Source: Macrostomum lignano (Eukaryota). From it: a stretch of DNA of 64,000 bases. The notes beneath the pieces were generated by a model. The model was not told the DNA's origin, ran no database searches, and was given only the letters and a program-made list of their open reading frames with translations. Below, one piece after another: positions 26,521 to 63,437 of this stretch (position 1 is its first letter; every line of letters begins with the position of its first letter). The DNA lies in NCBI GenBank assembly GCA_002269645.1, contig NIVC01003678.1:1-64000 (forward strand). The letters run 5' to 3'. The position numbers and the translations under genes were made by a program.

Positions 26521-29500
26521 TTATACTTCCGCGTCAGCATCCTTGGGCCAGGTGATGTCGAGATTGTCAGACTCCGGATGCAGAGTGTAGAATCCAACCA
26601 TGTCGGCGGCGGCAGCGGCGGCGGTCAAGGCGGATTTGCGCGAACTGGACGCCACGGCTCCCGTCGCGGCGGGGGGGCTGGCGGAGGCGGCAGCCCCTGC
26701 AGCGGCACCGGCGGATGTAGCAGCGGTTCCGCCGCGACCGTGATGCCGGCAGTAGGTGTGGTCGGCGTAGGGCAGAGCGTAGGGCACGGGAGTGTCGGAC
26801 CAGAGGCTGGCGGAGGTGGCTGCGGCCGGCTGCCTGGCAGCCCGGCCCGGCCCGGACGGCCGGACGGCGGCGGCTTTGCGACGTCGGCGACGACCTGCGG
26901 CGTTGAGCGCTAAGTCGAGCGTTACGCACTGGCGCATGCGGCAGCGCTGCCGCTCCAGCAGGCGATTCCTGCCGCCGTATTTCGGCATGTCCAAACAGAA
27001 GTCGCAGCGGCCGCAGTCGCTGACCCGAAGGCAGGGCGCGCACCGGCCGCAGCGTCTGGCAGCTGGGCCGTCGCCAGCGCCGCCAACGCCCAACCCATCG
27101 TCAATGTCGTCATCGTCCAAATCCGAGTCGTCGGAGTCGTCGTCGTCGTCGGAGATGCCGCGCCGATGATCGTCGTCGGTCTCGGTGGACGAAGCGGCCG
27201 AGGAGCGGCTGCGGCGCTCGGCGGGCAGCAGAAGGTCCTCCGCCTGCGGCAGCCCGAAATCGTCTTCGTCCTCATCCTCATTGGCATTGGGCACCAGCGC
27301 TGGCATCGACGGCTGTTGCTGCTTCCGTGAGTTTTTTGTTGCCTGCTGTTGTTGTTGCTGCTGCTTGCCGGCACTGGCGGCCCGGCGGCCGCGCTTCTTG
27401 GGCTCACCAGCCGGAGCGGCGGCGTTAGAAGCGGCAGCAACTGCAGCGGCCTGTTTAGAAGTTGAATCGGTGGTCGCCGCCGATTTTCTCTTTCTTCCTC
27501 TGGCTGGCGGAGTCGGCGCCGATGCCGCTGCTGCCGCCTCGGATGCCCGCTTGCGCTTGGCTGCTGGCTGGCCGCTGTGATTAGCGCCGGATTTTGAAGC
27601 CTTCGCAGAACTGGCCGCAGCGGTTTTCTTGTCCTCGGAGCCGGCCTGCTGGGACTGGCCGCGCTTCCGGGAGGCTGAGCCAGTCTGAGCGACGGCAACC
27701 GGCGCCCGGCCTTTCTTATACTGAATAGCCAAGCCCGGATGCTTTTTCAAGCACTTTGAACAATAGAACTTGTTAATAGCGGCCGCGTCCTTCGAGCTGA
27801 CCCCGATGCAGTCGCCGTGGTACCACTCCTCACATTTGTCGCAGGCGATCATAAATCTGTCAATGTCGGTAGATCGGCACACGCACCAGGCCTGCAGGTC
27901 GCTAGAGGCTGAGGAGGCCGACTTCTTTTTTGAAGCGGCTGTACCGCCGCCGCCGCTCTGTTGCCGCTGCTTGCTGGCAGCGCCGCGTTTCTAAGAAAAG
28001 GGAGAAGCGAAGGACATTATGAAGCTGTAGAGTTGAGGAGATATCTAATGAGACAATTGAGCCACTATTTGCATAGTTTACCTAAAAACTTTATTAGAAT
28101 TGTCCATTAAAAACAATCAAGAAGTGTTTTGATTGTTACAGAACATAACTATTAGACCAAAGAAAAATTATTACTTAAGGAAAAAAGGACAATCAATTAA
28201 GGATTTGTTTATCTTTTAACTAAGTTGCATAGCTGGTGTTATTTAACAGGTTGTGCACATGTAATGACCTAGTAATAATTCACAACCATAGGTTATTGTG
28301 ATGCAATGCCAGAACCAGTATTATCCAATAAAAAGCAGGCCTATAAGAACATTAATAATACAACTGTACTTTTTACTGTACAGAGACTAATAAGATTTTA
28401 AAGTTACTTTTTGTGTTTTTATTGCATTTGATAACTGTTATGTGCCTAAGTAAAAAGACACTCCTACTTTTGAATATTGGTAAATATAATTTATTGATAC
28501 AAAAGGGTCTAATACAACTAAAATAGCCAAAACCTTTACAACAAAACAATAATAGCAAGTCCTAATTCTAGAACAGTGTTCCCACTCAGCAACCTTCATT
28601 TTTTTGTGCCAAGCCATTCATTTTTGCGCCATGGATATTTTTTGCACCACTATCACTCTTTACCTCTAAGGCTATAATGTAGTATGATGCCCATTGAGAC
28701 ATTAAAAACACTCAAATACCTAATATTCATGCATCTCAATCATAAATCATCCAATTTTTGATGAGATAAAACACTACAACTTGGCAAAAAATGGGTCAAA
28801 AAATGGCAACAACAGCATGGGCATCAGACTATTAATTTCTCTAAATCAAAATTGCAATTATAAAACATATTAGTTTCTAAAAAAGCATCCAAAAATGCGG
28901 AAAGGGTTACAATTTAGGCACAAATTTTCCACATTTTTAGATTTGCATTGAACTTTATTAATTATGCATTCACGCCATATTGCCTCATTTTCAGGCATGG
29001 TACAAATTTGTGCCAAAGTGGGAACACTGCTCTAGAATACATAAGAAAGGCTATAAAAATAGATTTGTAATTATAATTAAGCATATTAAAGGTTGGTACT
29101 TGACTAGGGGTAACAAAAACTAATCTTATTAAAGACTAATAATTTAGTAGGATTTTTAAAGTTATTTTTAAGTATTTTTTCTATTTTATTTGATTTTAGT
29201 GGCTGTGGAGGCAATAAAGCTAACCTAAAAAGTAAAAAAAGATTTTGCAAAAGTTTTAAGCATATATATTATCAAAGACTGGTTAAAAATTAAAAAATTA
29301 TATCGACTTTACATTCCAGTATCAGGAATATATGCTTATATACCACTGTACACTAAAATAAAATTTCCCTTCCTACGACCTAGCTTCTATATGCAAATGG
29401 ACTTAAGCAAATTTAGCAAAAATCTTGTCAAATTAGGAAATAGAATAATTCAATCTAATCTATAGCTTATTAATTCTTTTGGTACAATGGCACTTATATG

Positions 29501-31780: not shown

Positions 31781-33287
31781 AACAACAACAACAACAGAGT
31801 ACGCTGTCAGTTCGCAAAAGCAGCGTCAGATGGCGCGCTTCGAAGCTTGGGCGCGAACAAAGGCCGCACCGCCGGCAGAGTCCGGGGCGCCGGCGTCAGC
31901 CAGCAGACAGTCGACGTAGCGCCGAGTCCTCGCCTGTCCCCGCCGGTAGGGTGCCTTCAACGTAAGTAGGAGCACCTCCTGCACCGGCTCCGGACAGTAG
32001 GCCTCAGCGCGGATGACGTGGCCTGCCAGCTGGAGTCGCCGACGGCGCAGCAGATCGCTAGGACGGGCCAGGCCGGCGCGATGATAGAGCGCCGTGTTGG
32101 TGACTCGCTCGTTGCCGATCTTGAAGGCGGCGCTCAGCAGGCCAGCGTGCGCCGCGTCGACTTGAGCCTCGAGCGAGTCTGTCAGCGTCCAGGTCTCGGC
32201 GTTGTATAACAGGACGGTCTCGATCACCGCCTGGAACAGCGCCGCCCTGGAACAGCGGCGGTCCGGTAGGGCCTCGGACTGCAGGACTGACCTTATAGAA
32301 CGAAAGGCAGCCCAGGCAAGTCCTCGGCGACGCCGCAGATCCTCGCGGACGTCGGGAACCAGACCGCCAAGGTAGACGAACTGCTGGCATCTTGGAAGCT
32401 CACTCGCCTGTCCGTTAGCGCCTCGGCAGAAGATTGCAGCCTCGGTGTCGTCCGGCACGCATAGCACGACGGTTTTCTGCGTGTTGACCACCAGGCCGAC
32501 GCTCGCCGCAACGGCAACCAGCCTATCCAGCTGTCGTTGGGCGCCCTTGACGGTCGAGGACAGCAGGGCAAGGTCATCGGCGTAGCCAAGCACGCTGAGC
32601 CGTCTCTCCGGTTGGCGTCGACCCACGCGTCGCCGCAGCAGGAAGCCGTCGTCGTTGGAAGGCAGAGCAGTCCGTAGCACCCAGTCAAGCACCAGAATAA
32701 ATAGGAACGGCGCTAGCGTATCTCCCCAGAGCACCCCGGAGGATGTCTCGAAGAAATCCGATAGGCCGTCCGGTGTTGAGACAGCAGCCGTCGTGCCGTG
32801 GTACAGCGCCATGACAGCAGAAATCAGCAGCTCTGGCACGTTGTACGCACGGAGCACCTCTGGGAGCGCGTCCCTCACGACCGAGTCAAAGGCCTTCCTG
32901 AAATCGACGAAGATCAGGATTAGGGTCAACTGGCGGATGTGCGCCTCCTCGATGACTCGCCGAAGAGCCAGGATCTGCGTCACTGTGCCGCGATGGGGCC
33001 GGAATCCGTTCTGCTCAGGCCGCAGGTAGGGGTCCAGCACAGGCTGTAACCGCGATAGCAGCATGTGGTTGAACAGCTTCGCGGCGCAGGACTGTAGGCA
33101 GATGCCTCGATGCTCCTCGAGCTTGGTGGTGCCCGGCTTCTTTGGAATGGCGACGATGTGCGCCGTGGTCCATTCGTTTGGCGCCACCTCACCGGAAAGC
33201 ACGCGGTTCATCACTCTGGCGACCTCAGTGGCCACGCAGTGGATCCGCAGCGCCTCGGTGGGTAGTGACGAGCGCCTCGGTGGGTAG
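31781..33287 (-). mobile_element. 5'-truncated RTE-like non-LTR retrotransposon with open RT ORF
   Basis: ORF 31826-~33265 has RT motifs (IPKKPG..HRGICL, EQNGFRPHRG, FVDFRKAFDSV, GVL(W)GDTLAPFLF, YADD, FVYLG). No endonuclease. (TGT/TTG)n 3' tail at 31781-31795. The ORF-track start at 33304 lies outside the element. Confidence 0.92.
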
Positions 33288-33772
33288 CAATATATGTTGC
33301 ACATCTACACATTTTACATGTACCAAGAAGGACCAATCTGTAGTAACTGCAGGATCGACGTACGTAAAACTCAAAGATCGTGTAAATTTTTACGAGGTTG
33401 ATAATCCGGGAAAAAACACTGTGGAGACGACAGGAAAAATCAATTTTTTCATCCCAAAATCTATGATTGAATTTGATCTGAGGCAGTGAATATTAATTAC
33501 CATTTTAGCGTGCACATGTTGATATAGTTGTGCAGTGTGAGAAGTTTCATTTTTATATTTTTTCATCGCCCAAGCCAAGTTGAGGATACGATCACAAGTG
33601 AAATTTTTGTTTTGTTCCTCAAGAAGCATGCAGCAAAACTTAAAAATGAAACTTTCAGTCTACACAACAACAACAACATGAAACAACAACAACAACAATA
33701 ACAACAACAACAACAAAGTCTATTTGTCAGCCAAGTCAAGCGTCTCGGGATGATGTGACCTACTACTAGTTG

Positions 33773-46864: not shown

Positions 46865-47385
<521 letters not shown>

Positions 47386-47947
47386 ACTGTCTCCTCACAG
47401 TCGGGCAGGCAGCTGCCAGTCCCAGCCGGGGCGTGTCTAATTAACGGGCTCAGCGAGAAGGAATTAAAATTGTTAACACAGGGAACTGCACTCCAAGCCT
47501 GCAGCCATAGCAGCCGAGCTGTGCCAGCAGGCATCAATACGCCATGCGGATATTGATAATCAATGGCAGAGAACACTTGGCCTGACAAAAAACCAATGTC
47601 ACGAAAGCTCTGTCCTGCATGCATGTGCTACCGCCTGCTAGATAAACTTTTTTTTCGCCAGTTTCATTCTCTTTGTTCGATCCTGTATCTGATGCAGAGC
47701 AGCCCGGCTCGCTAGCTCACTCTCTGCCTCAATTGATCTTTCATTGTCTGGCGTCAATTCAGTCTTCGTCCAGAGAACGCTGAAAATTAATTTATGCTAA
47801 ACAATAGAAGTTCAATTTCAAGCAAACCGTTTTGAGGTGAGGATTGTGTCACACTTTATTGTCAGTCTCTTTCCTTTTTTCTACGTCTTTCTCCCCTTAT
47901 CGACCCTAAGGACTACTCACTTGAGTTGTCCTTGATCGCCCCCTGCT

Positions 47948-48660
47948 CACATCTCCCTCCCTCTCCCACATCTCCCTCTCTCACATCTCCCTCTCTCACA
48001 TCTCCCTCTCTCACATCTCCCTCTCTCACATCTCCCTCTCTCACATCTCCCTCTCTCACATCTCCCTCTCTCACATCTCCCTCTCACATCTCCCTCTCTC
48101 ACATCTCCCTCTCTCACATCTCCCTCTCTCACATCTCCCTCCTCTCTCACATCTCCCTCTCTCACATCTCCCTCTCTCACATCTCCCTCTCTCACATCTC
48201 CTCTCACATCTCCCTCTCTCACATCTCCCTCTCTCACATCTCCCTCTCTCACATCTCCCTCTCTCACATCTCCCTCTCTCACATCTCCCTCTCCTATCTC
48301 CCTCTCTCACATCTCCCTCTCTCACATCTCCCTCTCTCACATCTCCCTCTCTCACATCTCCCTCTCTCACATCTCCTCTCACATCTCCCTCTCTCACATC
48401 TCCCTCTCTCACATCTCCTTCTCTCACATCTCCCTCTCTCACATCTCCCTCTCTCACATCTCCCTCTCTCACATCTCCCTCTCTCACATCTCCCTCTCTC
48501 ACAACTCCCTCTCTTACATCTCCCTCTCTCACATCTCCCTCTCTCATATCTCCCTCTCTCACATCTCCCTCTCACATCTCCCTCTCATATCTCCCTCTCT
48601 CACATCTCTCTCTCACATCTCCCTCTCTCACATCACCCTCTCTTTTCTTCTCTTACATCT
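47948..48660. repeat. (ACATCTCCCTCTCTC)n 15-mer array, copy 1
   Basis: Period 15. Confidence 0.95.
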
Positions 48661-49134
48661 CCCTCTCTCGCCTTGGTCTCACCCCTCAGCCTCTCATTCT
48701 TCCCTTTCATAACTCTTCCCTCCATCACTCTCCATCTCTTCTATCTCATTTGTAATCCATTTTTGCGTTCGACTATATTCTTGTTGTTTACGCACCAGCC
48801 TCTCGGCTCTTCATCATTCAACGCACATGGCTCCCCCAATAATTTCTCCGGATAAAAAAGTCTCCTGCTGCTCATGCTGTCCATGCAGGAAGAGCGCCAG
48901 GACAGGCAGACATCAGCGGCCGCAGCAGCAGCAGCAGAATGCAGATCAAAAGATATTGACAGCATATGGATAATTTCTCCCTCCCATGGCCAGCCCCTGC
49001 AGCTGGGTCTGCTGCCCCGGAAAACAGTTTTTGATCCCCACCCCAACCCCCGATCATCAAACCGGGCTTCCTCTCAGTTGGGCCCGATTTTTTCCCTCAG
49101 ATAAAAGCACTTCCATATATCACACCGCGCCTCT

Positions 49135-49715
49135 CCCTCCTCTCCCTCTCTCCCTCATCTCCCTCTCTCACATCTCCCTCTCTCACATCTCCCTCTCTCC
49201 CTCATCTCCCTCTCTCACATCTCCCTCTCTCACATCTCCCTCTCTCACATCTCCCTCTCTCACATCTCCCTCTCTCACATCTCCCTCTCTCACATCTCCC
49301 TCTCTCACATCTCCCTCTCTCACATCTCCCTCTCTCACATCTCCCTCTCTCCCTCATCTCCCTCTCTCACATCTCCCTCTTTCACATCTCCCTCTCTCAT
49401 ATCTCCCTCTCTCACATCTCCCTCTCTCATATCTCCCTCTCTCACATCTCCCTTCTTTCTCACATCTCCCTCTCTCACATCTCCCTCTCTCACATCTCCC
49501 TCTCTCACATCTCCCTCTCTCATATCTCCCTCTCTCACATCTCCCTCTCTCACATCTCCCTCTCTCACATCTCCCTCTCTCACATCTCCCTCTCTCACAT
49601 CTCCCTCTCTCACATCTCCCTCTCTCATATCTCCCTCTCTCACATCTCCCTCTCTCACATCTCACTCTCACATATCTCCCTCTCTCACATCTCCCTCTCT
49701 CACATCTCCCTCTCG
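49135..49715. repeat. (ACATCTCCCTCTCTC)n 15-mer array, copy 2
   Basis: Same unit as 47948-48660. Confidence 0.95.
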
Positions 49716-50319
49716 CATACAGTCCCCAGCCCAATTTCATCTGCCTGACTGCCGATGGAGATTCCCGCTGTTCGGCTTTTTTTATTGTCGACATGCAGGT
49801 GCGCGAGTTTGGGACTCTGGCTCTGGCCTAATCAGCAGCCTGTCTGTCCGACTGCGCCTGCGATCGATAAATATTGTTCTTATACTAGCTGCTGATGGCT
49901 GTAATATCCTGTCTGTCTTGGCCTCTACTCAGTCAGTCAGTAATTCAGTCAGTCAGTCAGTCAGGCTGTCTGCCTGCCTGTCTGTCTGTCTGTCTGCCTG
50001 CCTGTCTGTCTGTCTGTCTGTCTGCCTGTCTGTCTTAGTGTCTGTCTGTCTGTCTGTCTGTCTGTCAGGTTTTCTATCTGTCAGGCTGTCTATCTGTCCG
50101 GTTTTCTATCTGTCAGGCTGTCTATCTGTCAGGCTGTCTATGTCTATCTGTCAGGCTGTCTATCTGTCAGGCTGTCTGTCTGTCAAGCTGTCTATCTGTC
50201 AGGCTGTCTATCTGTCAGTAAGTCACTTGCTATGCTTATATTGCCCTCTATGATCTTCTGTCTCTCCAAGATCCTTCCTTTCGCAATGAGTCCTTTACCG
50301 GGCACTCTAAATTTACTAG

Positions 50320-51362
50320 CCGAGACAGTGGCAGTACCGGTGCCAGATCAGACGGCCAGCACCTGTGCAAGGGCAATGCTCGAGGAGTGGGTCTGTCACT
50401 ACGGAGCCCCAGGGACAATCCACTCGGATCAGGGAGCCAATTTCGAGTCGCAATTGCTCGGCCAGCTGTGCGAAAGTCTGAATATCCGAAAGACGCGTAC
50501 GACCGCCTATCACCCCTCTGGAAACGGCCAAGTGGAAAGCTTCAATAAGACGCTGACTGCAGTGATCCGGGCGCACCTGGTGAAGGAGCCGGATCAGAGG
50601 CGGTGGGACGAATTCGTTGCCCCGGCGCTCATGGCGTATCGCTCCAGTGTGCACCGCGGCACCGGCCTTTCACCCTTCTTCCTTCTGCATGGTCGCGAGA
50701 TGTCTCTGCCAGTTGACTTGGGAGTGGCGCGCCCACTGGACATCGAACCGTACTGCGAGGAAGTCCAGAACCTGCGGGAGACGCTCGTGGAAGCCCATCG
50801 GGTGGTGCGTGAGAGAATAACGTCATATCAACGAGTGCAGAAAGACTGGTACGACCGGAAGGTGAAGGGTCGAGAATTCGTGGCTGGCGACGAGGTGTTC
50901 GTCTACAACCCCGTGTTGAAGGCCGGTGCCAAAGCGAAGCTCCACTCACCCTGGACCGGACCTGCCGTAGTTCTCGAGAAGCTGTCGGAGACGCGCTATA
51001 GGATTCGACAGGAAGGTCGACGGAAGCCGATCAAAGTGGTGCACTTTAACAACCTCCTGCCTCGATACCGGAAGTACCCAGTCGACGGCACCGGTGGCCC
51101 TCGGCGTCCTGCACCAAGGAGGTACCACCCAGGTCCTGCTCAAGAGACGGAATCCGTCAGGGAGGACTCGCAGGAATCAGACGATGAGGATGAGGAGCGA
51201 TGGTGGCGACATTCCGGGCGGGTTCGAGAGGAGGGAGAACCAATGGATGTGCAGCAGCCAGGAGTGCAGCCGCAGCCGGAAGCGCCAGTTGAAGTCATCG
51301 AAGGTCGACCCCAGAGGGATCGAAGGGTTCCGCAGCGTTATGGAACGCCCGTGTATTATTAA
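50320..51362 (+). pseudogene. 5'-truncated Gypsy integrase (core + GPY/F-like C-terminus)
   Basis: IHSDQGANFES (second D), KTRTTAYHPSGNGQVESFN (E), ALMAYRSSVH..TGLSPF, WTGPAVV..VVHFNNL. The HHCC zinc finger and first catalytic D are missing; the ORF-track N-terminus from 50232 is flanking DNA. Confidence 0.9.
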
Positions 51363-51390
51363 GAGCGGACGTGAGTGCGTGCGCAGTGTC

Positions 51391-51755
51391 GCGTCATCTC
51401 CTGCGTCATAAATAATTGGTTCGAAGCATCATTCGCGTCATCTCCTGCGTCATAAATAAGTGGTTCGAAGCATCATTCGCGTCATCTCCTGCGTCATAAA
51501 TAATTGGTTCGAAGCATCATCCGCGTCATCACCTGCGTCGTCAACATTTGGTTCGAAGCATCATCCGCGTCATCACCTGTGTCATAAATAATTGGTTCGA
51601 AGCATCATCCGCGTCATCTCCTGCGTCATAAATAAGTGGTTCGAAGCATCATTCGCGTCATCTCCTGCGTCATAAATAATTGGTTCGAAGCATCATCCGC
51701 GTCATCACCTGCGTCGTCAACATTTGGTTCGAAGCATCGTCTGCGTCATCACCCG
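51391..51755. repeat. 44-bp tandem repeat inside the retroelement (GCGTCATCTCCTGCGTCATAAATAATTGGTTCGAAGCATCATTC)n
   Basis: Period 44, about 8 copies, directly after the integrase stop. Confidence 0.9.
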
Positions 51756-51923
51756 CGTTATTGAAAACTGGGCTCGTGTTATTGCCTCTGCTTCACAAAC
51801 AAAAATATATATTTCCCCTCTTAAGGCCCGTCAGGGGAGGTCCCACCTGCCCAACCCTGCCATCAGGGATGAAGGATCGGCGCCCCAAAGAGGCTCGAAG
51901 GAACCATTGCCCTGCTCTCAAAA

Positions 51924-52841
51924 GTGAGTCGTGGTTGTTGCAGGCACTGCTTTCCGGGCATAGACCTCTACGCCGAGTTTGGTGTCAGCCCCTTCGCGAC
52001 GGAGGAGGAGCTGCGACGTGCGTACCGCCGTGAGAGCCTGCGACGGCACCCCGACAAGTGTGGACCCGGTGGAACGGAGAATTTCCAGAGGCTGCAGCAT
52101 GCGAGTGCGGTCCTGCTGTGTCCGTTTCGACGAGCGCTGTACGACCGGTTCGGGCAGGATGCCGTTAGCAACCCGCTCGAGTGCGCCCGGTATTTTGTCC
52201 CGCCGGATGGGATGTGCGTCCCGGAGGAGTTTGTCGTAACGATTGAAGACGAAACAGAAGAGTCAGACGAGGACAGGGAGTCGGAAGGAAGCGAGCGTGG
52301 TGGTTGCGGCGGCGAGGAGACTGCTCAGAGCTGCTGTGAAATCACGCAGTCAGAGGAAGAAGAGCTCTTGAATGAATCCGACGGCGAAACTTCGATGTCA
52401 GAAGACGAACCGGAGCTCGTCATCGACCAACGGGAGTCGCCAGCGTGGCTGATGAGGAGCGAGCCGAGTACCGAGGTGGAATACACCTGGAGCGGGGAGG
52501 CAACGCAGCGAAGAGCTCGAATCCGGTCGGAGCTTCGGCACGCTTTGTTGTCGGGGAGTCCAGCTGCGATGTTCCGGCTTTTGACTGAAATGGTGGGACT
52601 GTGCGGCAGCGAGCGGCTGGATCATCGACGCGAAATCGCCGAGCTTTTGGCTCAGACTGTCAAGTTCATTCTCCGTGACATCAGCGCCAAGTGTCGGGGT
52701 CATGCTCGGCGTGTCTGGCGGCGGCCTGCCTTCAAGCGAAGCACTCGGTTCGTCATGAGTGTTGCGATCCCTCAGTTTGAACTAATCGTCGGAGGACGCG
52801 TGTTGGGGTTGTTGCGCCGGGCGGCGGAGGTGGCGGTCTAG
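51924..52841 (+). CDS. Retrotransposon accessory ORF: N-terminal J-domain (DnaJ/Hsp40, HPD intact), acidic linker, basic helical C-terminus
   Basis: 51963-52154 encodes DLYAEFGVSPFATEEELRRAYRRESLRRHPDK...ENFQRLQHASAVLLCPFRRALYDRFG, matching all four J-domain helices. HPD at 52047-52055. The frame is open from 51873 but has no ATG before the J-domain (the track start is GTG). Confidence 0.85.
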   Translation: MSRGCCRHCFPGIDLYAEFGVSPFATEEELRRAYRRESLRRHPDKCGPGGTENFQRLQHASAVLLCPFRRALYDRFGQDAVSNPLECARYFVPPDGMCVPEEFVVTIEDETEESDEDRESEGSERGGCGGEETAQSCCEITQSEEEELLNESDGETSMSEDEPELVIDQRESPAWLMRSEPSTEVEYTWSGEATQRRARIRSELRHALLSGSPAAMFRLLTEMVGLCGSERLDHRREIAELLAQTVKFILRDISAKCRGHARRVWRRPAFKRSTRFVMSVAIPQFELIVGGRVLGLLRRAAEVAV

Positions 52842-52959
52842 GGGGTTCTGGGGCAGGATGCCAGGGCGGGCAAGAGACCTTCACTCCTTCATTTCATCCC
52901 ATCTCTCATCTGATCGTCGTTGTGATCCCTCTGTTTGGCACTGGGAGCGGCCCCGAAGG

Positions 52960-53640
52960 AAGGGCGGGGAACACTCTCGGCCATGCCCGGCGTTCTCGGT
53001 CGCTGCCCGGTGTTTTCGGCCGCTGCCAGTCGTTCTCGGCCGCTGCCCGGCATTCTCGGCCGCTGCCCGGCATTCTCGGTCGCTGTCCGGCACTCTCGGC
53101 CATGCCCGGCGTTCTCGGTCGCTGCCCGGTGTTTTCGGCCGCTGCCAGTCGTTCTCGGCCGCTGCCCGGCATTCTCGGCCGCTGCCCGGCATTCTCGGTC
53201 GCTGTCCGGCATTCTCGGCCATGCCCGGCGTTTTCGGCCACAGCCCGGCATTCTCGGCCGCTGCCCGGCATTCTCGGCCGCTGCCCGGCATTCTCGGCCG
53301 CTGTCCGGCACTCTCGGCCATGCCCGGCGTTCTCGGTCGCTGCCCGGCATTCTCGGCCGCTGCCCGGCATTCTCGGCCGCTGTCCGGCACTCTCGGCCAT
53401 GCCCGGCGTTCTCGGCCATGCCCGGCGTTCTCGGTCGCTGCCCGGCATTCTCGGCCGCTGTCCGGCATTCTCGGCCATGCCAGGCGTTCTCGGCCGCTGC
53501 CCGGCATTCTCGGTCGCTGTCCGGCATTCTCGGCCATGCCCGGCGTTTTCGGCCACAGTCCGGCATTCTCGGCCGTGCCCGGTGTTCTCGGCCTGTCCGA
53601 CATCCTCGGCCCCTGTCCTGCGCTCTCGGCCGCTGCCTGA
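52960..53640. repeat. CpG-rich ~20-bp modular repeat (CTCGGCCGCTGCCCGGCATT)n in the element 3' UTR
   Basis: Direct reading; includes a ~122-bp higher-order duplication. ORFs in all six frames reflect lack of stop codons. Confidence 0.9.
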
Positions 53641-53725
53641 CACTCTTGGTCTCTTTCATTCAGTTTCATTTCATTACATTTTTTTTTCATTTTCATTCAG
53701 TCAAAGCGCGTCGTTTTCTTTTTTT

Positions 53726-53736
53726 AGGGGGGAGGG
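53726..53736 (+). other. Polypurine tract
   Basis: AGGGGGGAGGG preceded by a T-run and immediately followed by TGTTGT. Confidence 0.9.
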
Positions 53737-54142
53737 TGTTGTGACCTGTGTCACAGTGCTCCCCTGGTGCAAGTGCACTTTGATAGTTGTTGACTTTGGT
53801 AGTTGATTATTGTTACCCCCCCCCCCGGCTCAAGCCAGTCTGGAGCTATGAGCCCTTTGGCTGAGCCTCTGCTCTCTTTCTCTCTCTCTCTCGCCTTGGC
53901 TGTTTAGCCCTTTGGCTAGCCGTGCTGATTGGCTGGGCCTCTGCTCTCTCTCCCTCTCCCTGGCCGTGCGCGCTTCCACCCTCCCCTCGCCGCAGCCAAT
54001 CAGCTGTCAATCAGCTCCATTGTTTAAGCCCTTTCTCCCCCCCCTTGTTTGCGCCCCTGCCCCTTTTTACTCGTTATTTAAGGCGACGCTCAGACCCCGC
54101 CCCTTTTCTCACCGTGCCTGCGCCCCATTTGCGCCCACCGCG

Positions 54143-54151
54143 ATAAATAAA
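54143..54151 (+). promoter_or_regulatory. Overlapping TATA-like box / AATAAA poly(A) signal of the LTR
   Basis: ATAAATAAA lies ~28 nt upstream of TCAGCCG (Inr-like, 54168-54174) where the SL starts. It is the only AATAAA I see in the LTR. Confidence 0.6.
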
Positions 54152-54171
54152 CGAACGTGACCAGCGATCAG

Positions 54172-54215
54172 CCGTAAAGACGGTCTCTTACTGCGAAGAC
54201 TCAATTTATTGCATG
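54172..54215 (+). other. Genomically encoded copy of the flatworm spliced-leader exon inside the LTR
   Basis: CCGTAAAGACGGTCTCTTACTGCGAAGACTCAATTTATTGCATG matches the Macrostomum lignano SL as I recall it. It has a 5' CCGT-AAAG-ACGG hairpin and the flatworm-type TTGCATG 3' end. It is not followed by GT, so this is not an SL RNA gene. Confidence 0.85.
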
Positions 54216-54336
54216 CCTGCGGCCTTCCCGTGTATGAGTGCTATAATCGACCCGGCCCGGTAAGCTGTCGAGACAATTGCCTGTGTTCCTCGGGGTCGCT
54301 CTCCTGATCTCTCTCTCTCTCACTCTCTCCTCAGTC

Positions 54337-54540
54337 TGACTCACCAGGCTGTCGAGTGGCCGACCGCCCGCAGCCCTCTCTCTCTTCCTTGACTCACCAG
54401 GCTGTCGAGTGGCCGCCCGCCCACAGCCCTCTCTCTTTTCCTTGATTCACCAGGCTGTCGAGTGGCCGACCGCCCGCAGCCCTCTCTCTCTTCCTTGACT
54501 CACCAGGCTGTCGAGTGGCCGCCTGCCCACAGCCGCCCCT
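54337..54540. repeat. 53-bp tandem repeat x4 in the LTR downstream (U5-like) region
   Basis: TGACTCACCAGGCTGTCGAGTGGCC at 54337, 54390, 54443 (TGATTCA variant) and 54496. Confidence 0.9.
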
Positions 54541-55273
54541 CCCCTCTCTCTCGACTTCTCAACCTTGACCTCCCCCCGAAGTGTCCGTACGCCTCGGGGT
54601 CGCCGATCGAGCTCGTAAGCCCTGGGCAGTCTAGTACCCGAACCCCGACACCGCTACCCGTCGCCCAACCCGGCCGTGCCAGCGAGGAAGGGGGATACAA
54701 CATATGCTCAAGCTCGAATGGCCTCCTTCACTCGCCTTCCGCTGCAGACGCTGACTCCCATTTCCATCTCCCCTATAATTGCATCACTTGCTTGAACAGC
54801 TTTCAACTTAAGGCTCCACTCGCAGAGTCCAATTCGACTCAGCCAGCAGCCAGAGGCGCATTGGGCAGCGCCTCTCGGTTTAAGCCGGCATTCCCGATCC
54901 ATCTTAGCGGCTGCCGGCAGACCGGCCGATCGGCAAGGGCGCTGCTGGATTAGCCATGAGCTGATGCGCCTAGCTCTCTTCCCGGCTCTCTGCATCAATC
55001 TTCTCCTATACTTTATTTTCTTTTTTATAATGAAATTAGAATTAAAATGAACCCCTTTCATGCATTGCTGTGACGCTGTGACAATAGAAGATGAGAAGAT
55101 ATTATATTGAGCATCCTTCCTCGATTTCGTGTAGATCGACTTAAGACCCTCAGATAGAACAGGTGGATTTCACTAGATCTCACGAATGGATAAATAGGAA
55201 AAATCGGTATTTCATGACTCGTTCGTCCTCGGGTTTTAGCATTGGTTCTGTTGTTTTGGCTTGAAGCAAATAC

Positions 55274-56070
55274 TCACCCGATGAGTGCAGCAGAGTCTCC
55301 TCTACCCAAGCTCCCGGCACGACTATCGAACCCTGGACAGGCACCGGACAGCACGCTCGAGCAGTCGGATTGTCGGCGCCAGTTGGAGACGAGTAGAGGC
55401 GCCGGTAGCGACAGGGGCGACGCCTGCTGAGATGGCTGCGAGCTTTGATGATGATACACTGCAGGCTGCAGCTGCTGTGGTGGCGGCGGTGGCGGCGGTG
55501 GCGGCGTCTCCGGAGACGATCTGCGCTCCATGAACAGCCGATCCTCAGCGACCGACTCCCAGTCCAAGGCGTCGCATTTCAGGCAGAGACTCAGTCTTAA
55601 AGTTGAATTGTCCAGCCGCTGGTTGGGACTGTATGGCGTGAGAATGAAGGCTCGCTGCTCGGGCTGGTTGAGGCAACCGATCCCTGCGAGATGGATGTTC
55701 ACAAAGCCGAGCTTAGAGAATGATCGGCCGCCTTTCTCTTCCTTTCTAACTGAGACGCGAATTGTTCCGGCTGGTAGGCGGCAGCTGAACTGCAACGGCG
55801 GCTCGTAGGGCTCGCCGGAGTCACCGTTGCCATTGGTTACTGCGCTGCAGTCGGTGCCGGACCACGTGACCCGATTGTCGCGAATCTCGCGCCGGCTTGA
55901 GTACCGGCAGAACTGGCCACCGCTCAGTAGGCGAACCTTTGCAAACAGTACCCATTGCTAAGGGTGACACCTTCCATGCCATTTAGAGTTAGCTCGACGT
56001 CACATTTATACTGCTGGCGCTTAGCACTAGTTCGGGATTCATTTGAAGCGTGACGCACGCAACTGAACAT
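55274..56070 (-). CDS. FAM102A: FAM102/EEIG-family NT-C2 domain protein with a 1-nt frameshift at ~55952
   Basis: ATG at 56070. KRQQYKCDVELTL..VTLSNG/VLFAKVRLLSGGQF..SSRREIRDNRVTW..IRVSVRKEEKGGRSFSKLGFVNIHLA..RLDNSTLRLSL parallels FAM102A (NGVLFCKVRLLDGG..RVSVRKELKGGKAYSKLGF..RQDNSILKV). A G|GTGAGT donor near 55276 suggests a further exon. A-vs-B paralogue assignment is not possible. Confidence 0.8.
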
Positions 56071-56688
56071 ATCCTAAGTTATTTAGACTGGCTAATCAAA
56101 CTATGTGGAGCCATTTCCTCTGCTGTCTAGCTGTCTTGTGGCTTGAAGAATCAAAGATTCCATAATTTAGCTTGAGATTGTTTAGATGAATCTCTGAATC
56201 CTAGCTTTCGTTGGATAGATTTAGAAAATTAAAAAACGCGAAATGAATTTATTTATATCCAATCATGTTTATGGATTTAGAAACGTTTCTTCCAGACAAT
56301 TGTTAGAAAGGAAATCTAAATCTAAGACTATTTTAAAGACGGTACAATGTTTTTTCGTTTAGGCCTGCTTCGGTAACAACGAGTGCGGTACGAATCTTGC
56401 TTTTAGTACTGTACAGCTGTATCTCGGGCTCGAAATTTAAAAGTCCGCCTTTATAGCTACTGATTTGTTTTAACAAATAATCAAAACAAAGAGTAGCATA
56501 ATTTAAAAGTATTTCTAGTGCGTTTGGTTTAAATATTTTTATACAGTTTTTAAATTTGATACATACCAGGAACATACCTTTAAATAATAAACAAGATTTC
56601 TTGAAAAAGAGTTTGATTTTCATTGAGTCTGAAAAATCACTAAATTGTTTCATTCAATAGCCGAATATGATCGAGCAATACAATAAAT

Positions 56689-56856
56689 ATGCCACTTCGA
56701 GAGCCAACACCTGAGCAGGAGGCGAGGATTTTTAAGCTTTTTAAGAAGCTAGACGTAACAAATGATGGAAAAATCAGTACCAGCGATTTGAAAATAGCTC
56801 TACAACAGCTAAAAATTCCAACTTTTCCTGGACAAAAGGATGAACAATTTGCTGAG
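56689..56856 (+). CDS. First coding exon with EF-hand, probably a Ca2+-binding mitochondrial carrier (SCaMC/SLC25A23-25 type)
   Basis: MPLREPTPEQEARIFKLFKKLDVTNDGKISTSDLKIALQQLKIP contains a canonical EF loop DVTNDGKISTSD. GAG|GTAACC donor. No downstream exons found in the window, so the family call is tentative. Confidence 0.6.
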
Positions 56857-57666
56857 GTAACCAAGCTTAAATGTTTATCTTGATAATCTTGAAACATTAG
56901 TAGTTACTGTAAAAGCTGCTTATTGACTTTTCTGGCTAGCAGTTGTGGCATTTATGACTAAAGACAAAGTTGTAAAACTGTTTTATGTATTAGGCCTTAG
57001 GAAGTTAGGGTTAGGATCTTCTCTGGTCTGGTATAGCATAGGGGCATTTAACTCATAATAGGTCACCTAAAATATATAATCTATATATGCCTTGCATGAA
57101 ATATGCTTTTAGACACATTTTTTTCAGGGTATAATTGAATGAATTCGTGTCAATTAGATAATAGTTTTTAATAAATTAAATTTAATAAATAAATTAAAAA
57201 TAATTAATATTCTAAATAACACTTTAGGCCTACCATAATTAATGATAAAATTTTAGTCAATATTTTTTGATAATTTTTAATGAGCTTAAAACATTAAGTT
57301 TTAAATTAGAAAAAGGCTAAAAATTAACAAAATTAATCTATTATTTTAAATTTTAACTAAATCTCATAAATGCAATTTTTACTAGATTTTTAGCACTATT
57401 GCATATTATTAGTGCTCTATACTATATATATACACTTGTATGTCAATAAACAAATTGTGTAAGACTTGGCAACACAAATTTTTATTTTAGCTTCATGCAT
57501 TATGCATATGTTAAAATATTTTCCCACTCATGCGTATCACTTTCCTGAGTGTGGACAGATAGAAAGGTAATAGACAAAATAAATGTTTAATATCTATTTT
57601 TATCTTAGACCTATTTTATATGTTTATCAGTATTCTTATCTTTATATTTGACATGCCTATCAAGGG

Positions 57667-59729
57667 CCATAGTCAGGAAGGTGGCCTCTGAGTAGGGGGC
57701 GACCGGGACGGCCAAAGTCGGGCCCGGGTCGGGCCCGGGAATGAGGACTCGGGCCCGGGTCGGGCCTCGGGAATTCGGGACAAGATCTTTAAGACAGCTC
57801 AATAATTGGAAAAAAATCATAATAAATCTTAATACTTTTAGCATATGCGGATTACTATTAAATATATAATAAATATATTAATATATTAAATCTAATATAA
57901 TATTAAATGTATAATAAATATATGATAAACATTAAATATATTATAATATATAAATATATTAAATATATAATAATATATAAATATAATATATTATATTAAA
58001 TATATAATAAATATTATTTTTATTTAATACATTAGTTAAGACTTCAGAATAGATAAGAGTTACATTAAAAGACTTAATACTCAAATATCAATATACTCAA
58101 TAGTTCAAATTCAATGTCACTGTGTGGCACAAGTACTGTGTGTGTGCCAGTGACAGTGACACTAACACTTAACAGGCAGTGAGGTAGGCAAGCAGGCACT
58201 GCGGTAGTGCAGCTGGCACTGGCAGTGGCAGTAAGCAAAAAGAAGAAAAGCTGAAGCATTAAGTGTAAGGCACTTGGCATTGGAAGCAGTAAGGAAGTAA
58301 GAACCAAATCAATTGATTGATTCTTTTATTTGAATTTTTAGTTTCTTTACATAGCTTCAATGTAAAGAGCCATGTACACAGTCAGTATTCAGTAAGACAA
58401 CAAGACAAGACAACAGAACAGAACACAAGTGAAGTGACAACACAACACAACACTCAACTGTCTCAACAGAACAGGCAAACAGACAATGGAAATACAAGTA
58501 ATTAGCTGATACCTGCCTACCTGCTCACCTACCTACCTAAACGAATATGATTACGAATACGATACTGAGTCTACAACTACAACTACCTACGAATACAATA
58601 CAAATATGAACACGATTACAAACTCTGATAGATAGCAAACTTCTTGGAAAAATGGTAGCCTTGGCCCTTAATAGGTACTTCTTGGAACGTAAATAGGAAA
58701 TGTTATTTACAAAAGCTTAAAAATGACAAATCAACTTTTTAAAGAATCATATTTTTGCTTTTAGGCTGCAGCCTGCAGCGTGTAAAGTGGAATCAATATT
58801 GCATCAACTATGTTTTAATTTTATCTTCCTGGAAAAAATCCGATCTTCCTGGAAAGTGGAAACTGGCTGTGGCTGACGCTCACGGTCACAGACACTCACG
58901 CTTAGAGCCTACTACGAATCAATGATATTGCTACTTCACATCATATCATCTATTACTATTACTGCAGTCGTGCAGTGCTTGAGTCTTGAGTGCTGATGCA
59001 ATGCTTAACTGAGTGTTGTGCTGTGCTGTGAATAAAAATAATTTTATTCTTATTTGCACGCAGTTAGTGCCTTTAGGGAAAAAAGACTTGTCCCGATTTC
59101 CCGACTTTTTTAGGGTCGGGCCCGGGCCCGGGTCGGGCCACGATTTTGGTCGGGATTCCCGACTTTTCGGGCCCGGGCCCGGGACTGGGTCGCCCCCTAC
59201 CTCTGAGGGGGAAAATTCCTGCGCACACAAAGGGTCTCGGCGCACATTGGCGCACAAGTGTGGGGCACACAAGGGGTCCTTGGTGCACTTGGCGCACAAT
59301 CATAGCGCACACTGAGGTCCCTAGCGCATGTGGCACATAATTGCGGCACATAAGGTCCCTGACATGCATGAAAATTGTAATGCAAATTAACAATTTTACG
59401 TAAAATAAAGGAGATTTGTATAGTCTAGAAAATCAGTGATAAACTTTTTGTTTCTTTAAAATTAACAGTAAATAAAATTAGTATAAATTATCGCTAAAGA
59501 TGTAAATTTTGCATTATTCTATTTATAGGTATAATTTAAGTTTGTTTAAAATGAAAATATGCGTAAAATTTTAAAAAGGCTTTTCATACAAAGGCCTTTC
59601 TTAGAAAACTACTCGTGACGAGTGGCGCACAGATGGCGCACAGACAGCACACAAATGGCACATAGATGGCACATAAATCGTCCCAAAAAAATTATTCCAG
59701 CTCATACTGTGCCACCTTCCTGACTATGG
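57667..59729. mobile_element. Non-autonomous DNA transposon (~548 bp once the nested element is removed)
   Basis: 19-bp TIR CCATAGTCAGGAAGGTGGC. 8-bp TSD ATCAAGGG/AACAAGGG (7/8). Internal TGGCGCACA motifs. Confidence 0.75.
57693..59199. mobile_element. Non-autonomous hAT element (1507 bp) nested in the previous element
   Basis: 12-bp TIR TAGGGGGCGACC. Perfect 8-bp TSD CCTCTGAG (57685-57692, 59200-59207). Subterminal GGGCCCGGG/GTCGGG repeats at both ends. Confidence 0.85.
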
Positions 59730-61997: not shown

Positions 61998-63437
61998 TCA
62001 CTTCTTCAAATGGTGAGCGATGCCCCTCAGGTAGGAACGCAAAGGAAAGTCAGCAGGCAGACCGCCACCTTCGACGTTCCAACGCTGCGTGACGCGAAGA
62101 AGCATCGCGTTGCTCTGCACGTATCTCTTCCGCTCCTTCGGTGCTTCACTAGCGTTGGCTCGCTGCATCAGCAGTGCCTGGTGTTCGACTTCCTTTTTGA
62201 GGTCCTTCATGAGCCGAAAAACATTCGGATTGCTGCAACCCAGAATTGACTGGAACCTCCTATGCCAGGCTTCAACTGCGTTGTTCGTGCGATGAAGTCC
62301 ATTCAAAGTTCGCTCACGAACATTCCAAATTGAAGGTGAGAATCGAGGCTGCCGTCTTCCTCCGCCAGGAAGTCGATGGCCGACCCACTGGGCTTCAAAA
62401 TAGTCTGCTGTTGAAGCCATCTCCGCAGGAAAGTCAGGCAGCATTATTAACTCATCAAATGCTGCTGGAACACTATTAATAGGCACAAAGGCCAAAGCAG
62501 AAAGGCAACGCAGCCAGACGGACATCTCGCCATCTTCTTCAATCTGACGCTTTAATCCCTCAGCAACTGCTCTTCTGTACACGCACTGAACGAGGTGAAA
62601 TAGACAGCCTGTTGACTCGATGCCAAAGACATGCTGAACAGCATTCATGTTAGCTCGCTCAAAATCTGACATCCAGCGAAGTGGCCTCATGTTCGGCGCC
62701 AATTGATGCAGAGCCTCGTAAAATCGACAGTACGTTGCTTCGGTCTTGTTGGGTAGCAATGCGTAGATGAGTGGTCTTATGAAGCCTTGAAGTTCGGCAT
62801 GCACTGTCACCAGTTGAGCGAACAGTGGCGGCGAGGCATCGAATGTGCCGTCCGAGAAGAAATCTGTCGCCAATTGCAGGGCTTGAATGTTATCCTCGCT
62901 ACCGAAGATTAAAATTCGATTGTTGTCCTGTCCGGAGTCATGCAGCAGAAACAGTGCTCCGTTGTTGAATTGAAATTCTTCAGGTATAATGAGCTCGGCT
63001 CGATTGAGCGGCTGTACTGGAAGACCTTGGTGCGTTTGACGAACATCTTGAACTTGCCGCTTTAATGCGCTTTGAGATGGAAGGGCTATGCCTGCACACT
63101 CAGACAGCCCATTTGTGTGTTCCATGACGATATTTGCCGTCGAATTCACGGTGTTCCTGGCATCCGATTTAATCTCCCGAAGAGCCTCAAGAACTTGGAA
63201 TCGAGAGCCGTCAGGTCCGTGATTGTGGTCATTCAGCTGTCGCACTTTAAAGCCATTCCGGATGTGGATTCGAGCAGGACATGATCCCAAGCGCCGTTCT
63301 TCACACTGCCAAAATGACACCTCTTCGTCGACCAGGCTAGTTCTTTCAAGTGTAAAGTAGTAGCCTTCGCAGGCTGCTTTGCGCTTCCCACGAATTGTTG
63401 CACTAAAGCGCACAGCGATGGGAGGAGCTGCTTCCAT
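61998..63437 (-). CDS. Mutator-like (MULE) DDE transposase with N-terminal FLYWCH domain, 479 aa, uninterrupted
   Basis: FLYWCH: GYYF..FWQC..CPARI..HNH. MULE core: SDGTF, MSDFE, CLFH (CxxH), RTNNAVEAWH. No matching TIR pair found inside the window. Confidence 0.92.
   Translation of the reverse strand: MEAAPPIAVRFSATIRGKRKAACEGYYFTLERTSLVDEEVSFWQCEERRLGSCPARIHIRNGFKVRQLNDHNHGPDGSRFQVLEALREIKSDARNTVNSTANIVMEHTNGLSECAGIALPSQSALKRQVQDVRQTHQGLPVQPLNRAELIIPEEFQFNNGALFLLHDSGQDNNRILIFGSEDNIQALQLATDFFSDGTFDASPPLFAQLVTVHAELQGFIRPLIYALLPNKTEATYCRFYEALHQLAPNMRPLRWMSDFERANMNAVQHVFGIESTGCLFHLVQCVYRRAVAEGLKRQIEEDGEMSVWLRCLSALAFVPINSVPAAFDELIMLPDFPAEMASTADYFEAQWVGHRLPGGGRRQPRFSPSIWNVRERTLNGLHRTNNAVEAWHRRFQSILGCSNPNVFRLMKDLKKEVEHQALLMQRANASEAPKERKRYVQSNAMLLRVTQRWNVEGGGLPADFPLRSYLRGIAHHLKK

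What the first reader, a model, noticed from the sequence alone, without database searches (positions are those of the whole stretch)
54143..54215. LTR retrotransposon hard-codes the host spliced leader at its predicted transcription start
Seen: inside a well-defined LTR (PPT + TGTTGT...ACAACA), the 44-mer CCGTAAAGACGGTCTCTTACTGCGAAGACTCAATTTATTGCATG starts about 28 nt after ATAAATAAA and right at an Inr-like TCAG. It is followed by CCTG, not by the GT donor or Sm site of a real SL RNA gene. Established: flatworm mRNAs receive an SL exon ending in AUG by trans-splicing; this sequence matches the M. lignano SL as I recall it. Inference: element transcripts would begin with an SL exon without needing trans-splicing, mimicking host trans-spliced mRNAs, possibly for translation, stability or evasion of silencing. 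It could have been fixed in R by reverse transcription of a trans-spliced element RNA. I know of no description of an SL built into an LTR. Such copies would also confound SL-based calls of trans-spliced genes.
Basis: partly seen in the sequence, partly recalled or inferred. Interest (0 to 1): 0.95.

Follow-up and report, generated by a model that had tools for sequence, protein, structure and literature searches.

The report
Spliced-leader exon fossil inside a retrotransposon LTR
A complete, intron-less copy of the Macrostomum lignano spliced-leader exon sits in the terminal repeat of a broken Ty3/gypsy retrotransposon; it is a real fossil of reverse transcription of a trans-spliced RNA, but nothing shows that it marks the transcription start or is a family-wide adaptation.

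Summary
Window 54172-54215 equals the published 44-nt M. lignano SL. Compared with two genuine SL RNA genes I recovered (L009, L011), the match is 45 nt (54171-54215). It starts at the G before CCGT and stops exactly at the exon/intron junction, with no GTAAG donor, stems or Sm site. It is therefore RNA-derived (spliced), not a piece of an SL RNA gene. It lies in sense orientation in a 966-bp LTR-like unit (53737-54702; polypurine tract, TGTTGT...ACAACA), downstream of a truncated integrase and a J-domain ORF.

The window holds only this one LTR; the element is 5'-truncated, with no 5' LTR. The only other copy I could reach (Mlig_3_7 scaffold, L001) is the same insertion, and there the last two SL bases, including the AUG, are different. 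ATAAATAAA contains the LTR's only AATAAA, 20 nt before the SL, and a second TATA-like box (TATTTAAG) lies 68 nt further upstream. The SL therefore fits the R/U5 border at least as well as the transcription start. That is the product expected if strong-stop cDNA made on a trans-spliced element RNA jumped non-homologously to the RNA's 3' end. No tool here could map the TSS or test other family members.

The parts
50232..51362 (+). C-terminal two-thirds of a Ty3/gypsy integrase ORF, truncated at its 5' side by (GTCT)n/16-bp arrays
   Evidence: Pfam rve and Integrase_p58_C. tblastn with 17 longer relatives aligns only from about 50244/50325 onward. 100% identical to M. lignano BOX15_Mlig030754g1.
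51924..52841 (+). J-domain (DnaJ) ORF between integrase and LTR; an accessory ORF of the element lineage
   Evidence: Pfam DnaJ 1.3e-12. Full-length relatives at about 34% identity. The order integrase then J-domain also occurs in P0125 and in L012.
52975..53637 (.). 20-bp tandem array (about 34 copies) in the 3' untranslated part of the element
   Evidence: TRF
53726..53736 (+). Polypurine tract AGGGGGGAGGG abutting the LTR start
   Evidence: Sequence. A distant relative (L003) likewise has AAGGGAGGGGA next to its 3' LTR.
53737..54702 (+). 966-bp LTR-like unit, TGTTGT...ACAACA; the presumed 3' LTR
   Evidence: Sequence. No second copy in the window. Same unit with the same flank in L001.
54075..54082 (+). 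TATTTAAG, an alternative TATA-like box; it would place the TSS near 54105-54110
   Evidence: Motif scan; inference
54143..54151 (+). ATAAATAAA: TATA-like, and also the only AATAAA (54146-54151) in the LTR, 20 nt before the SL
54171..54215 (+). Complete intron-less copy of the SL exon (G plus the 44-mer)
   Evidence: 100% identical over 45 nt to the exon of SL RNA genes L009 and L011. Homology ends at the exon/intron junction and one base upstream of CCGT.
54214..54219 (+). Cluster of 5 differences in 6 nt between the window (TGCCTG) and Mlig_3_7 (ATCGAT), at the SL 3' end
   Evidence: It is the only base substitution between the two versions from 52790 to 54912.
54260..54264 (+). GTAAG, a consensus cis-donor-like site 44 nt after the SL
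   Evidence: M. lignano donor motif GT[G/A]AG (PMC8629364). Its use is not shown.
54337..54534 (.). 53-bp tandem repeat (3.7 copies) inside the LTR; one unit fewer in L001

Best explanation
The 45-nt segment is a relict spliced leader: a DNA copy of the mature SL exon, embedded in the sense strand of the 3' LTR of a 5'-truncated Ty3/gypsy-type element of M. lignano. It entered through RNA. An SL-trans-spliced transcript, most simply the element's own RNA trans-spliced in its 5' leader, was reverse-transcribed to its very 5' end.

Such an RNA lacks the 5' R. Its minus-strand strong-stop cDNA therefore could not make the homologous first jump and was joined non-homologously to the 3' end of a genomic RNA. 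That yields an LTR of the form U3 - R - SL - (rest of U5).

On this reading, TATTTAAG (54075) is the TATA box and R runs from about 54106 to 54170. AATAAA (54146) is the poly(A) signal, and the SL is the first sequence of U5. The SL would then lie about 65 nt inside the transcript rather than at the cap, and is probably a neutral fossil.

Shown: identity to the SL, exon-exact boundaries, absence of the intron, orientation, and position relative to AATAAA. Inferred: the strand-transfer mechanism, the R/U5 assignment and neutrality.
For: The SL is identical to the published leader.

Against two real SL RNA genes the homology is exactly 45 nt. It ends at the splice donor and one base before CCGT, and there is no similarity in the upstream or intron sequence. 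The real genes fold into three stem-loops with an Sm-like site, all absent here; Rfam finds nothing in 52-57 kb.

The LTR context is coherent. An integrase ORF, a J-domain ORF, a polypurine tract and TG...CA termini all lie on the + strand, and the integrase-then-J-domain order recurs in relatives.

The only AATAAA in the LTR ends 20 nt before the SL, and no poly(A)-signal-like hexamer follows the SL. The SL 5' end therefore coincides with a predicted RNA 3' end.

Trans-splicing of a Ty3/gypsy transcript is documented for C. elegans Cer1 (PMC3315495). Genome-encoded SL relicts from retroposition are documented in dinoflagellates (PMC6050394, PMC5585692).

The SL 3' end, including the AUG, differs between the two available versions of the locus, which argues against constraint on the leader.
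Against: No TSS or poly(A)-site data could be consulted, so the R/U5 assignment rests on motif spacing alone.

A jump onto a polyadenylated 3' end should leave an A-run. At most one A (54170) is present.

The U5 implied is unusually long (about 530 nt).

The LTR 3' boundary is unconfirmed: there is no second LTR, no TSD and no empty site.

The sequence upstream of the presumed acceptor does not match the M. lignano trans-splice motif [T/C]TNCAG.

Only one insertion was examined.
Confidence: 0.45

Rival explanations
1. ATAAATAAA is the TATA box and transcription starts at 54170-54172. Element RNAs therefore begin with a built-in SL and mimic trans-spliced host mRNAs, to the benefit of translation, stability or escape from silencing.
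For: TATA-like motif 21-29 nt upstream, TCAG at -4 to -1 and a GC box (CCCCGCCCC, 54097-54105) about 70 nt upstream. The copy includes the whole exon from its likely first base. The position next to this motif is unlikely by chance.
Against: The same motif is the only poly(A) signal in the LTR and none follows the SL, so R would be about 10 nt or less. Normal LTR replication offers no simple route that places a captured 5' leader directly after U3: a non-homologous 3' flap on strong-stop DNA cannot be extended (inference from the retroviral strand-transfer model). The AUG and last base of the SL are not conserved in L001. A Pol II start would give an m7G cap, not the TMG cap of real SL RNA. 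Only one truncated copy is known.
Confidence: 0.2
2. One-off insertion after, or unrelated to, element replication. A short cDNA of the 5' end of some trans-spliced RNA was patched into this LTR copy, for example by double-strand-break repair or LINE-type template switching. It is not a property of the element family.
For: In L001 the SL is flanked by an 8/9 direct repeat, CGATCAGCC ... CGATCGGCC, resembling a target duplication. No other family member could be found: the next integrase in 5.8 billion proteins is only 39-50% identical. RT-bearing non-LTR elements are nearby (RVT_1 ORF 31826-33304).
Against: The flanking repeat is not significant (9% of random positions in L001 score as well) and is absent in the window version. 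The inserted piece would have to be exactly the exon with nothing downstream of the splice junction, which is unusual for a cDNA fragment. The coincidence with AATAAA + 20 nt is left unexplained.
Confidence: 0.2
3. Chimeric retrocopy. An RT copying a trans-spliced host mRNA reached its 5' end and switched to the 3' end of an element RNA. The 'LTR' would then really end at R (54170), and everything from the SL onward would be a host mRNA copy.
For: It explains the junction at the predicted poly(A) site and the 5' truncation inside integrase. Template-switch chimeras are known for LINE-1 (own knowledge).
Against: No ORF with a family match, no poly(A) tract and no TSD lie downstream of the SL. 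The region carries a 53-bp non-coding tandem repeat. It ends in ACAACA, the inverted complement of the LTR start.
Confidence: 0.08
4. Assembly or polishing artefact that introduced leader sequence into genomic contigs.
For: The two versions differ precisely at the SL 3' end. Both assemblies may draw on the same PacBio data (PMC8629364).
Against: The SL is present in two separately assembled versions, with identical surrounding sequence. Genomic libraries contain no cDNA. 43-45 nt of perfect SL embedded in unique flanks is not a polishing-scale change.
Confidence: 0.02

Closest known systems
Relict spliced leaders (DinoSL relicts) in dinoflagellate retrogenes
   Same: A genome-encoded copy of a trans-spliced leader with no SL intron. 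It marks reverse transcription of a mature trans-spliced RNA (PMC6050394, PMC5585692).
   Different: Those relicts sit at the 5' ends of retroposed host genes, often stacked, in a protist. Here a single complete leader sits inside the LTR of a retrotransposon in an animal, with no retrogene body, poly(A) tail or TSD.
SL-gene-specific non-LTR retrotransposons (SLACS, CZAR, CRE in trypanosomatids; NeSL-1 in C. elegans)
   Same: A physical association between a retroelement and spliced-leader sequence.
   Different: Those are non-LTR elements that insert into SL RNA genes, so the leader belongs to the target. Here the flanks are not an SL RNA gene: no intron and no upstream homology. The element is a Ty3/gypsy LTR type.
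Trans-splicing of LTR-retrotransposon transcripts (C. elegans Cer1)
   Same: It shows that a Ty3/gypsy RNA can receive an SL (PMC3315495), which is the precursor my model requires.
   Different: In Cer1 the SL is added to a subgenomic spliced mRNA, and no DNA copy of SL1 in the LTR is reported.
Host-sequence capture and aberrant first-strand transfer in retroviruses and LTR retrotransposons
   Same: Non-homologous template switching during reverse transcription builds foreign sequence into the element (own knowledge of retroviral transduction).
   Different: Classical transduction captures coding sequence internally. Here a 45-nt non-coding leader lies at the presumed R/U5 border.
LTR-initiated transcripts that use trans-splice acceptors (Echinococcus ta-TRIM solo LTRs)
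   Same: Interplay between flatworm LTRs and the SL trans-splicing system. An LTR donor can replace the SL (PMC4558846). This LTR also has a GTAAG 44 nt after the SL.
   Different: ta-TRIM LTRs do not contain the SL. Use of the donor here is untested.

Membership tests
SL RNA gene | SL exon sequence | tested here: met
   45/45 identical to the exons of L009 and L011
SL RNA gene | GT splice donor directly after the exon | tested here: not met
   The exon is followed by CCTGCGG (window) or replaced at its last 2 nt by ATCGATCGG (L001). Real genes have GTAAGAC.
SL RNA gene | Intron with stem-loops and Sm-binding site | tested here: not met
   L009 and L011 fold into three stems with AUUUUUAG. There is no homology downstream of the exon in the LTR and no Rfam hit.
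LTR of a Ty3/gypsy LTR retrotransposon | Polypurine tract abutting a TG...CA unit with terminal inverted repeats | tested here: met
   AGGGGGGAGGG | TGTTGT ... ACAACA, 53726-54702. The 3' end is supported only by a 6-nt motif.
LTR of a Ty3/gypsy LTR retrotransposon | pol (integrase) upstream in the same orientation | tested here: met
   rve and Integrase_p58_C ORF 50232-51362
LTR of a Ty3/gypsy LTR retrotransposon | Second, near-identical LTR with PBS and target-site duplication | tested here: not met
   No second copy in 64 kb. The element is truncated in integrase. TSD and PBS therefore cannot be examined.
LTR of a Ty3/gypsy LTR retrotransposon | Multiple dispersed family copies | not testable with these tools
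   No M. lignano genome is searchable by DNA. The only other copy (L001) is the same insertion. The closest other integrase is 39-50% identical.
Relict SL from retroposition of a trans-spliced RNA | Leader copy bounded by the RNA 5' end and the splice junction, without intron | tested here: met
Relict SL from retroposition of a trans-spliced RNA | Retrocopy hallmarks downstream (intronless gene body, poly(A), TSD) | tested here: not met
   No family match, poly(A) tract or significant flanking repeat
SL-gene-targeting non-LTR retrotransposons (SLACS/NeSL) | Insertion at a fixed site within an SL RNA gene | tested here: not met
   Flanks of the SL copy show no SL RNA gene sequence on either side
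   No RNA 5'-end or 3'-end data are reachable. Motif geometry is ambiguous.

The most novel reading that the evidence does not exclude
An active M. lignano Ty3/gypsy family carries the host SL exon in both LTRs so that its Pol II transcripts start with the leader. This would make element RNA look like trans-spliced host mRNA to the translation or small-RNA surveillance machinery.
Probability: 0.1. Interest if true: 0.85.

Novelty: new variant of a known kind. Interest (0 to 1): 0.5.

Why it matters
If confirmed in the genome, this would be, as far as I could find, the first animal example of a spliced leader fixed in the DNA of an LTR retrotransposon. It would show that a trans-spliced retroelement RNA (or a template switch onto one) can complete reverse transcription and integration. 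It would also provide a datable molecular fossil of that event.

In practice, such copies create genome-encoded SL matches. These can mislead SL-read-based calling of trans-spliced genes and the annotation of SL RNA genes in Macrostomum. If the leader proved to be cap-proximal and conserved across a family, it would be a new kind of host-mRNA mimicry by a transposon. The present evidence does not favour that reading.

Tried and rejected
- Second LTR in the window: none (blastn; repeat finder dominated by satellites).
- Rest of pol upstream: absent.
- Protein search with the J-domain ORF in the word-indexed database: no hit.
- Composite peptide query (SL translated in both open frames, LTR ORFs and the downstream gene's N-terminus), meant to find other genome-encoded SLs and homeologous loci: nothing at E<=10, and the search was wasted.
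- Distant relatives P0002 and P0005: ENA metagenome contigs with 167-nt LTRs, no SL, too distant to align LTRs.
- IMG/VR: no SL and no integrase relative.
- Rfam: no family over the LTR.
- Supplementary LTR family consensus sequences of PMC12801592: not held.
- TSD-like repeat around the SL in L001: not significant.
- 3' ends of the five SL-bearing transcript contigs as a yardstick for AAUAAA spacing: no poly(A) tails, uninformative.
- HSE and [T/C]TNCAG motifs in the LTR: none.
- A fuzzy-regex scan timed out and was replaced by blastn-short.
- I first thought the two SL RNA genes showed compensatory changes. The alignment shows none, and I withdrew the idea.

Full report
**1. What is there**

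The 44-mer CCGTAAAGACGG...TTGCATG occurs once in the window, at 54172-54215 on the + strand. None of 100 dinucleotide-preserving shuffles contains it. It is letter-for-letter the consensus trans-spliced leader reconstructed from M. lignano transcripts (PMC5173321). It also contains the 35-nt SL used by Ustyantsev and Berezikov (PMC8629364). The organism is confirmed: the integrase ORF 2.8 kb upstream is 100% identical to M. lignano protein BOX15_Mlig030754g1.

**2. Independent yardsticks for the leader**

A scan of JGI metagenome contigs for a 27-nt SL core returned six contigs.
- Five are transcript-like. The leader sits at the extreme 5' end and is joined after ...GCATG to five unrelated mRNAs.
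- The sixth (L009) holds a genuine SL RNA gene...CTTTG|CCGTAAAG...TTGCATG|GTAAGACACC..., followed by two further hairpins that bracket AGUAUUUUUAG.

A scan of GTDB genomes found a second SL RNA gene next to a U1 snRNA gene (Rfam 151.7 bits). It lies on a contig misbinned into a Flavobacteriaceae MAG (L011). The two genes share the exon and the fold.

Aligned with them, the LTR matches over exactly 45 nt, window 54171-54215. The match begins at the G that precedes CCGT in both genes and ends at the exon/intron junction. There is no similarity upstream or in the intron. The copy therefore derives from a spliced RNA and not from SL RNA gene DNA. It is not an SL RNA gene, and Rfam finds nothing in the region.

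**3. Context**

All of the following lie on the + strand, in this order:
- The C-terminal two-thirds of a Ty3/gypsy integrase (50232-51362; Pfam rve and Integrase_p58_C). Its N-terminal part and all upstream pol and gag are missing, cut off by simple arrays.
- A 44-bp array.
- A J-domain ORF (51924-52841).
- A 20-bp array.
- A polypurine tract, AGGGGGGAGGG (53726-53736).
- A unit that starts TGTTGT at 53737 and reaches ACAACA at 54702.

The integrase-then-J-domain order recurs in distant relatives (P0125, L012), so the 3' part of the element is coherent. That makes the LTR reading good, with three limits. There is no second LTR in 64 kb. There is no PBS or TSD to examine. ACAACA alone is a weak end marker, because the motif occurs about 0.5 times per kb in the window.

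**4. The only other accessible copy is the same insertion**

The Mlig_3_7 scaffold NIVC01001446.1 (L001) is collinear with window 46904-57692 at about 98% identity, and it shares the flank after ACAACA. From 52790 to 54912 the two versions differ only by homopolymer indels, one 53-bp repeat unit and a cluster of 5 changes in 6 nt at 54214-54219. The window reads TTGCA TGCCTG CGG; L001 reads TTGCA ATCGAT CGG. L001 therefore carries 43 of the 45 SL bases and lacks the AUG.

The flank beyond 54912 is about 1.2% diverged, so these are two haplotypes or duplicates, not one sequence. I cannot explain the clustered change. It does show that the 3' end of the leader is not conserved.

**5. Transcription start or R/U5 border?**

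That motif contains the only AATAAA of the LTR, ending 20 nt before the SL. No poly(A)-signal-like hexamer follows the SL inside the LTR.

An LTR element needs an R region between its TSS and its poly(A) site. With the TSS at 54171, R could be only about 10 nt. A second TATA-like box, TATTTAAG at 54075, with CCAAT motifs about 80-100 nt further upstream, would start transcription near 54106. That gives a conventional R of about 65 nt, ending where the SL begins.

This layout, U3-R-SL-U5', is also what the retroviral strand-transfer scheme predicts in one specific case. Strong-stop cDNA made on a trans-spliced genomic RNA, which has lost its 5' R, would be joined end-to-end to the 3' end of a genomic RNA. 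The resulting element would remain replication-competent.

There are weaknesses in my reading:
- At most one A lies at the junction where a poly(A) remnant would be expected.
- The implied U5 is long.
- No acceptor motif is seen.
- No RNA end data were available.

I therefore hold the R/U5 placement at about 0.45 and the TSS placement at about 0.2.

**6. Other rivals**

- In L001 an 8/9 direct repeat (CGATCAGCC/CGATCGGCC) brackets the SL. This could mark a patch insertion. It could also mark the few bases between a trans-splice acceptor (CAG|CGATC) and the poly(A) site. But 9% of random positions score as well, so I give it little weight.
- A LINE-type chimeric retrocopy would explain the junction and the 5' truncation. 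It lacks any gene body, poly(A) tract or TSD downstream.
- An assembly artefact is unlikely, because two assembled versions agree.

**7. Comparison with what is known**

Genome-encoded leader relicts from retroposition are well known in dinoflagellates (PMC6050394, PMC5585692). A Ty3/gypsy transcript receiving an SL is documented for C. elegans Cer1 (PMC3315495). Flatworm LTRs interacting with trans-splice acceptors are described for Echinococcus ta-TRIM (PMC4558846). SL-gene-targeting non-LTR elements (SLACS, NeSL) are a different thing, since here the flanks are not an SL RNA gene.

Searches of the M. lignano trans-splicing, genome and LTR-retrotransposon papers, and of the wider library, found no report of an SL inside an LTR. 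I class this as a new variant of a known kind: a relict SL in a new place and phylum.

**8. Verdict**

Location in an LTR is probable (about 0.8). A built-in cap-proximal leader that mimics host mRNAs and is hard-coded in a family is not shown, and on motif geometry it is the less likely reading.

The decisive data already exist publicly for M. lignano but were out of reach here. They are a genome-wide BLAST of the LTR, and the 5'-end and poly(A)-site read tracks.

Noticed in passing
window 51924-52841 (+); L012 1228-2157: A J-domain (DnaJ) ORF lies between integrase and the 3' LTR. Relatives at about 34% identity over the full length also follow an integrase (P0125: Integrase_p58_C then DnaJ; L012: integrase ORF 48% identical, then the J-domain ORF). 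This points to a retroelement lineage that encodes its own J-domain protein.
   Followed up: partly
window 54214-54219 vs L001 13935-13940: Five of six bases differ (TGCCTG vs ATCGAT) exactly at the SL 3' end. Otherwise there is no substitution between the two versions across about 2.1 kb. The cause is unknown: a multi-nucleotide mutation, a conversion or a polishing error.
   Followed up: partly
L011 (JAGQZA010000190.1) 1121-1283 and 1589-1700: A contig filed in a 'Flavobacteriaceae' MAG carries a U1 snRNA gene (Rfam 151.7 bits) and a Macrostomum-type SL RNA gene. It is eukaryotic (flatworm) contamination of the bin.
   Followed up: yes
L009 (Ga0302322_100095745) 615-725; L005-L008, L010 (Ga0316592): JGI 'metagenome' contigs contain a genuine Macrostomum SL RNA gene and SL-capped mRNAs. 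These samples therefore hold flatworm nucleic acid and could be mined for more copies of the LTR.
   Followed up: partly
window 4000-50200: Nearly continuous blocks of different tandem arrays (periods 4, 8, 9, 11, 12, 14, 15, 20, 23, 25, 31, 34, 44 bp and others), some recurring at distant positions (e.g. 11.2 kb and 45.4 kb; 9.5 kb and 49.9 kb).
   Followed up: no
window 31826-33304 (-), 26521-27882 (-), 61998-63437 (-): Other mobile-element or domain ORFs: an RVT_1 reverse transcriptase, a PHD plus CXXC zinc-finger ORF, and an intact-looking FLYWCH plus MULE transposase ORF of 479 aa.
   Followed up: no
window 57693-59199 vs L001 ~17951: The window carries about 1.5 kb of extra, partly AT-rich repeat sequence relative to Mlig_3_7. 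Flank divergence rises from about 0.2% to about 1.2% beyond 54912, suggesting mosaic haplotypes or duplicates.
   Followed up: partly
window 54260-54264 and 56689 onward: A consensus GTAAG donor lies 44 nt after the SL, and an EF-hand mitochondrial-carrier gene starts 2 kb downstream on the same strand. An LTR-to-gene fusion transcript, as seen for Echinococcus ta-TRIM, is conceivable but untested.
   Followed up: no
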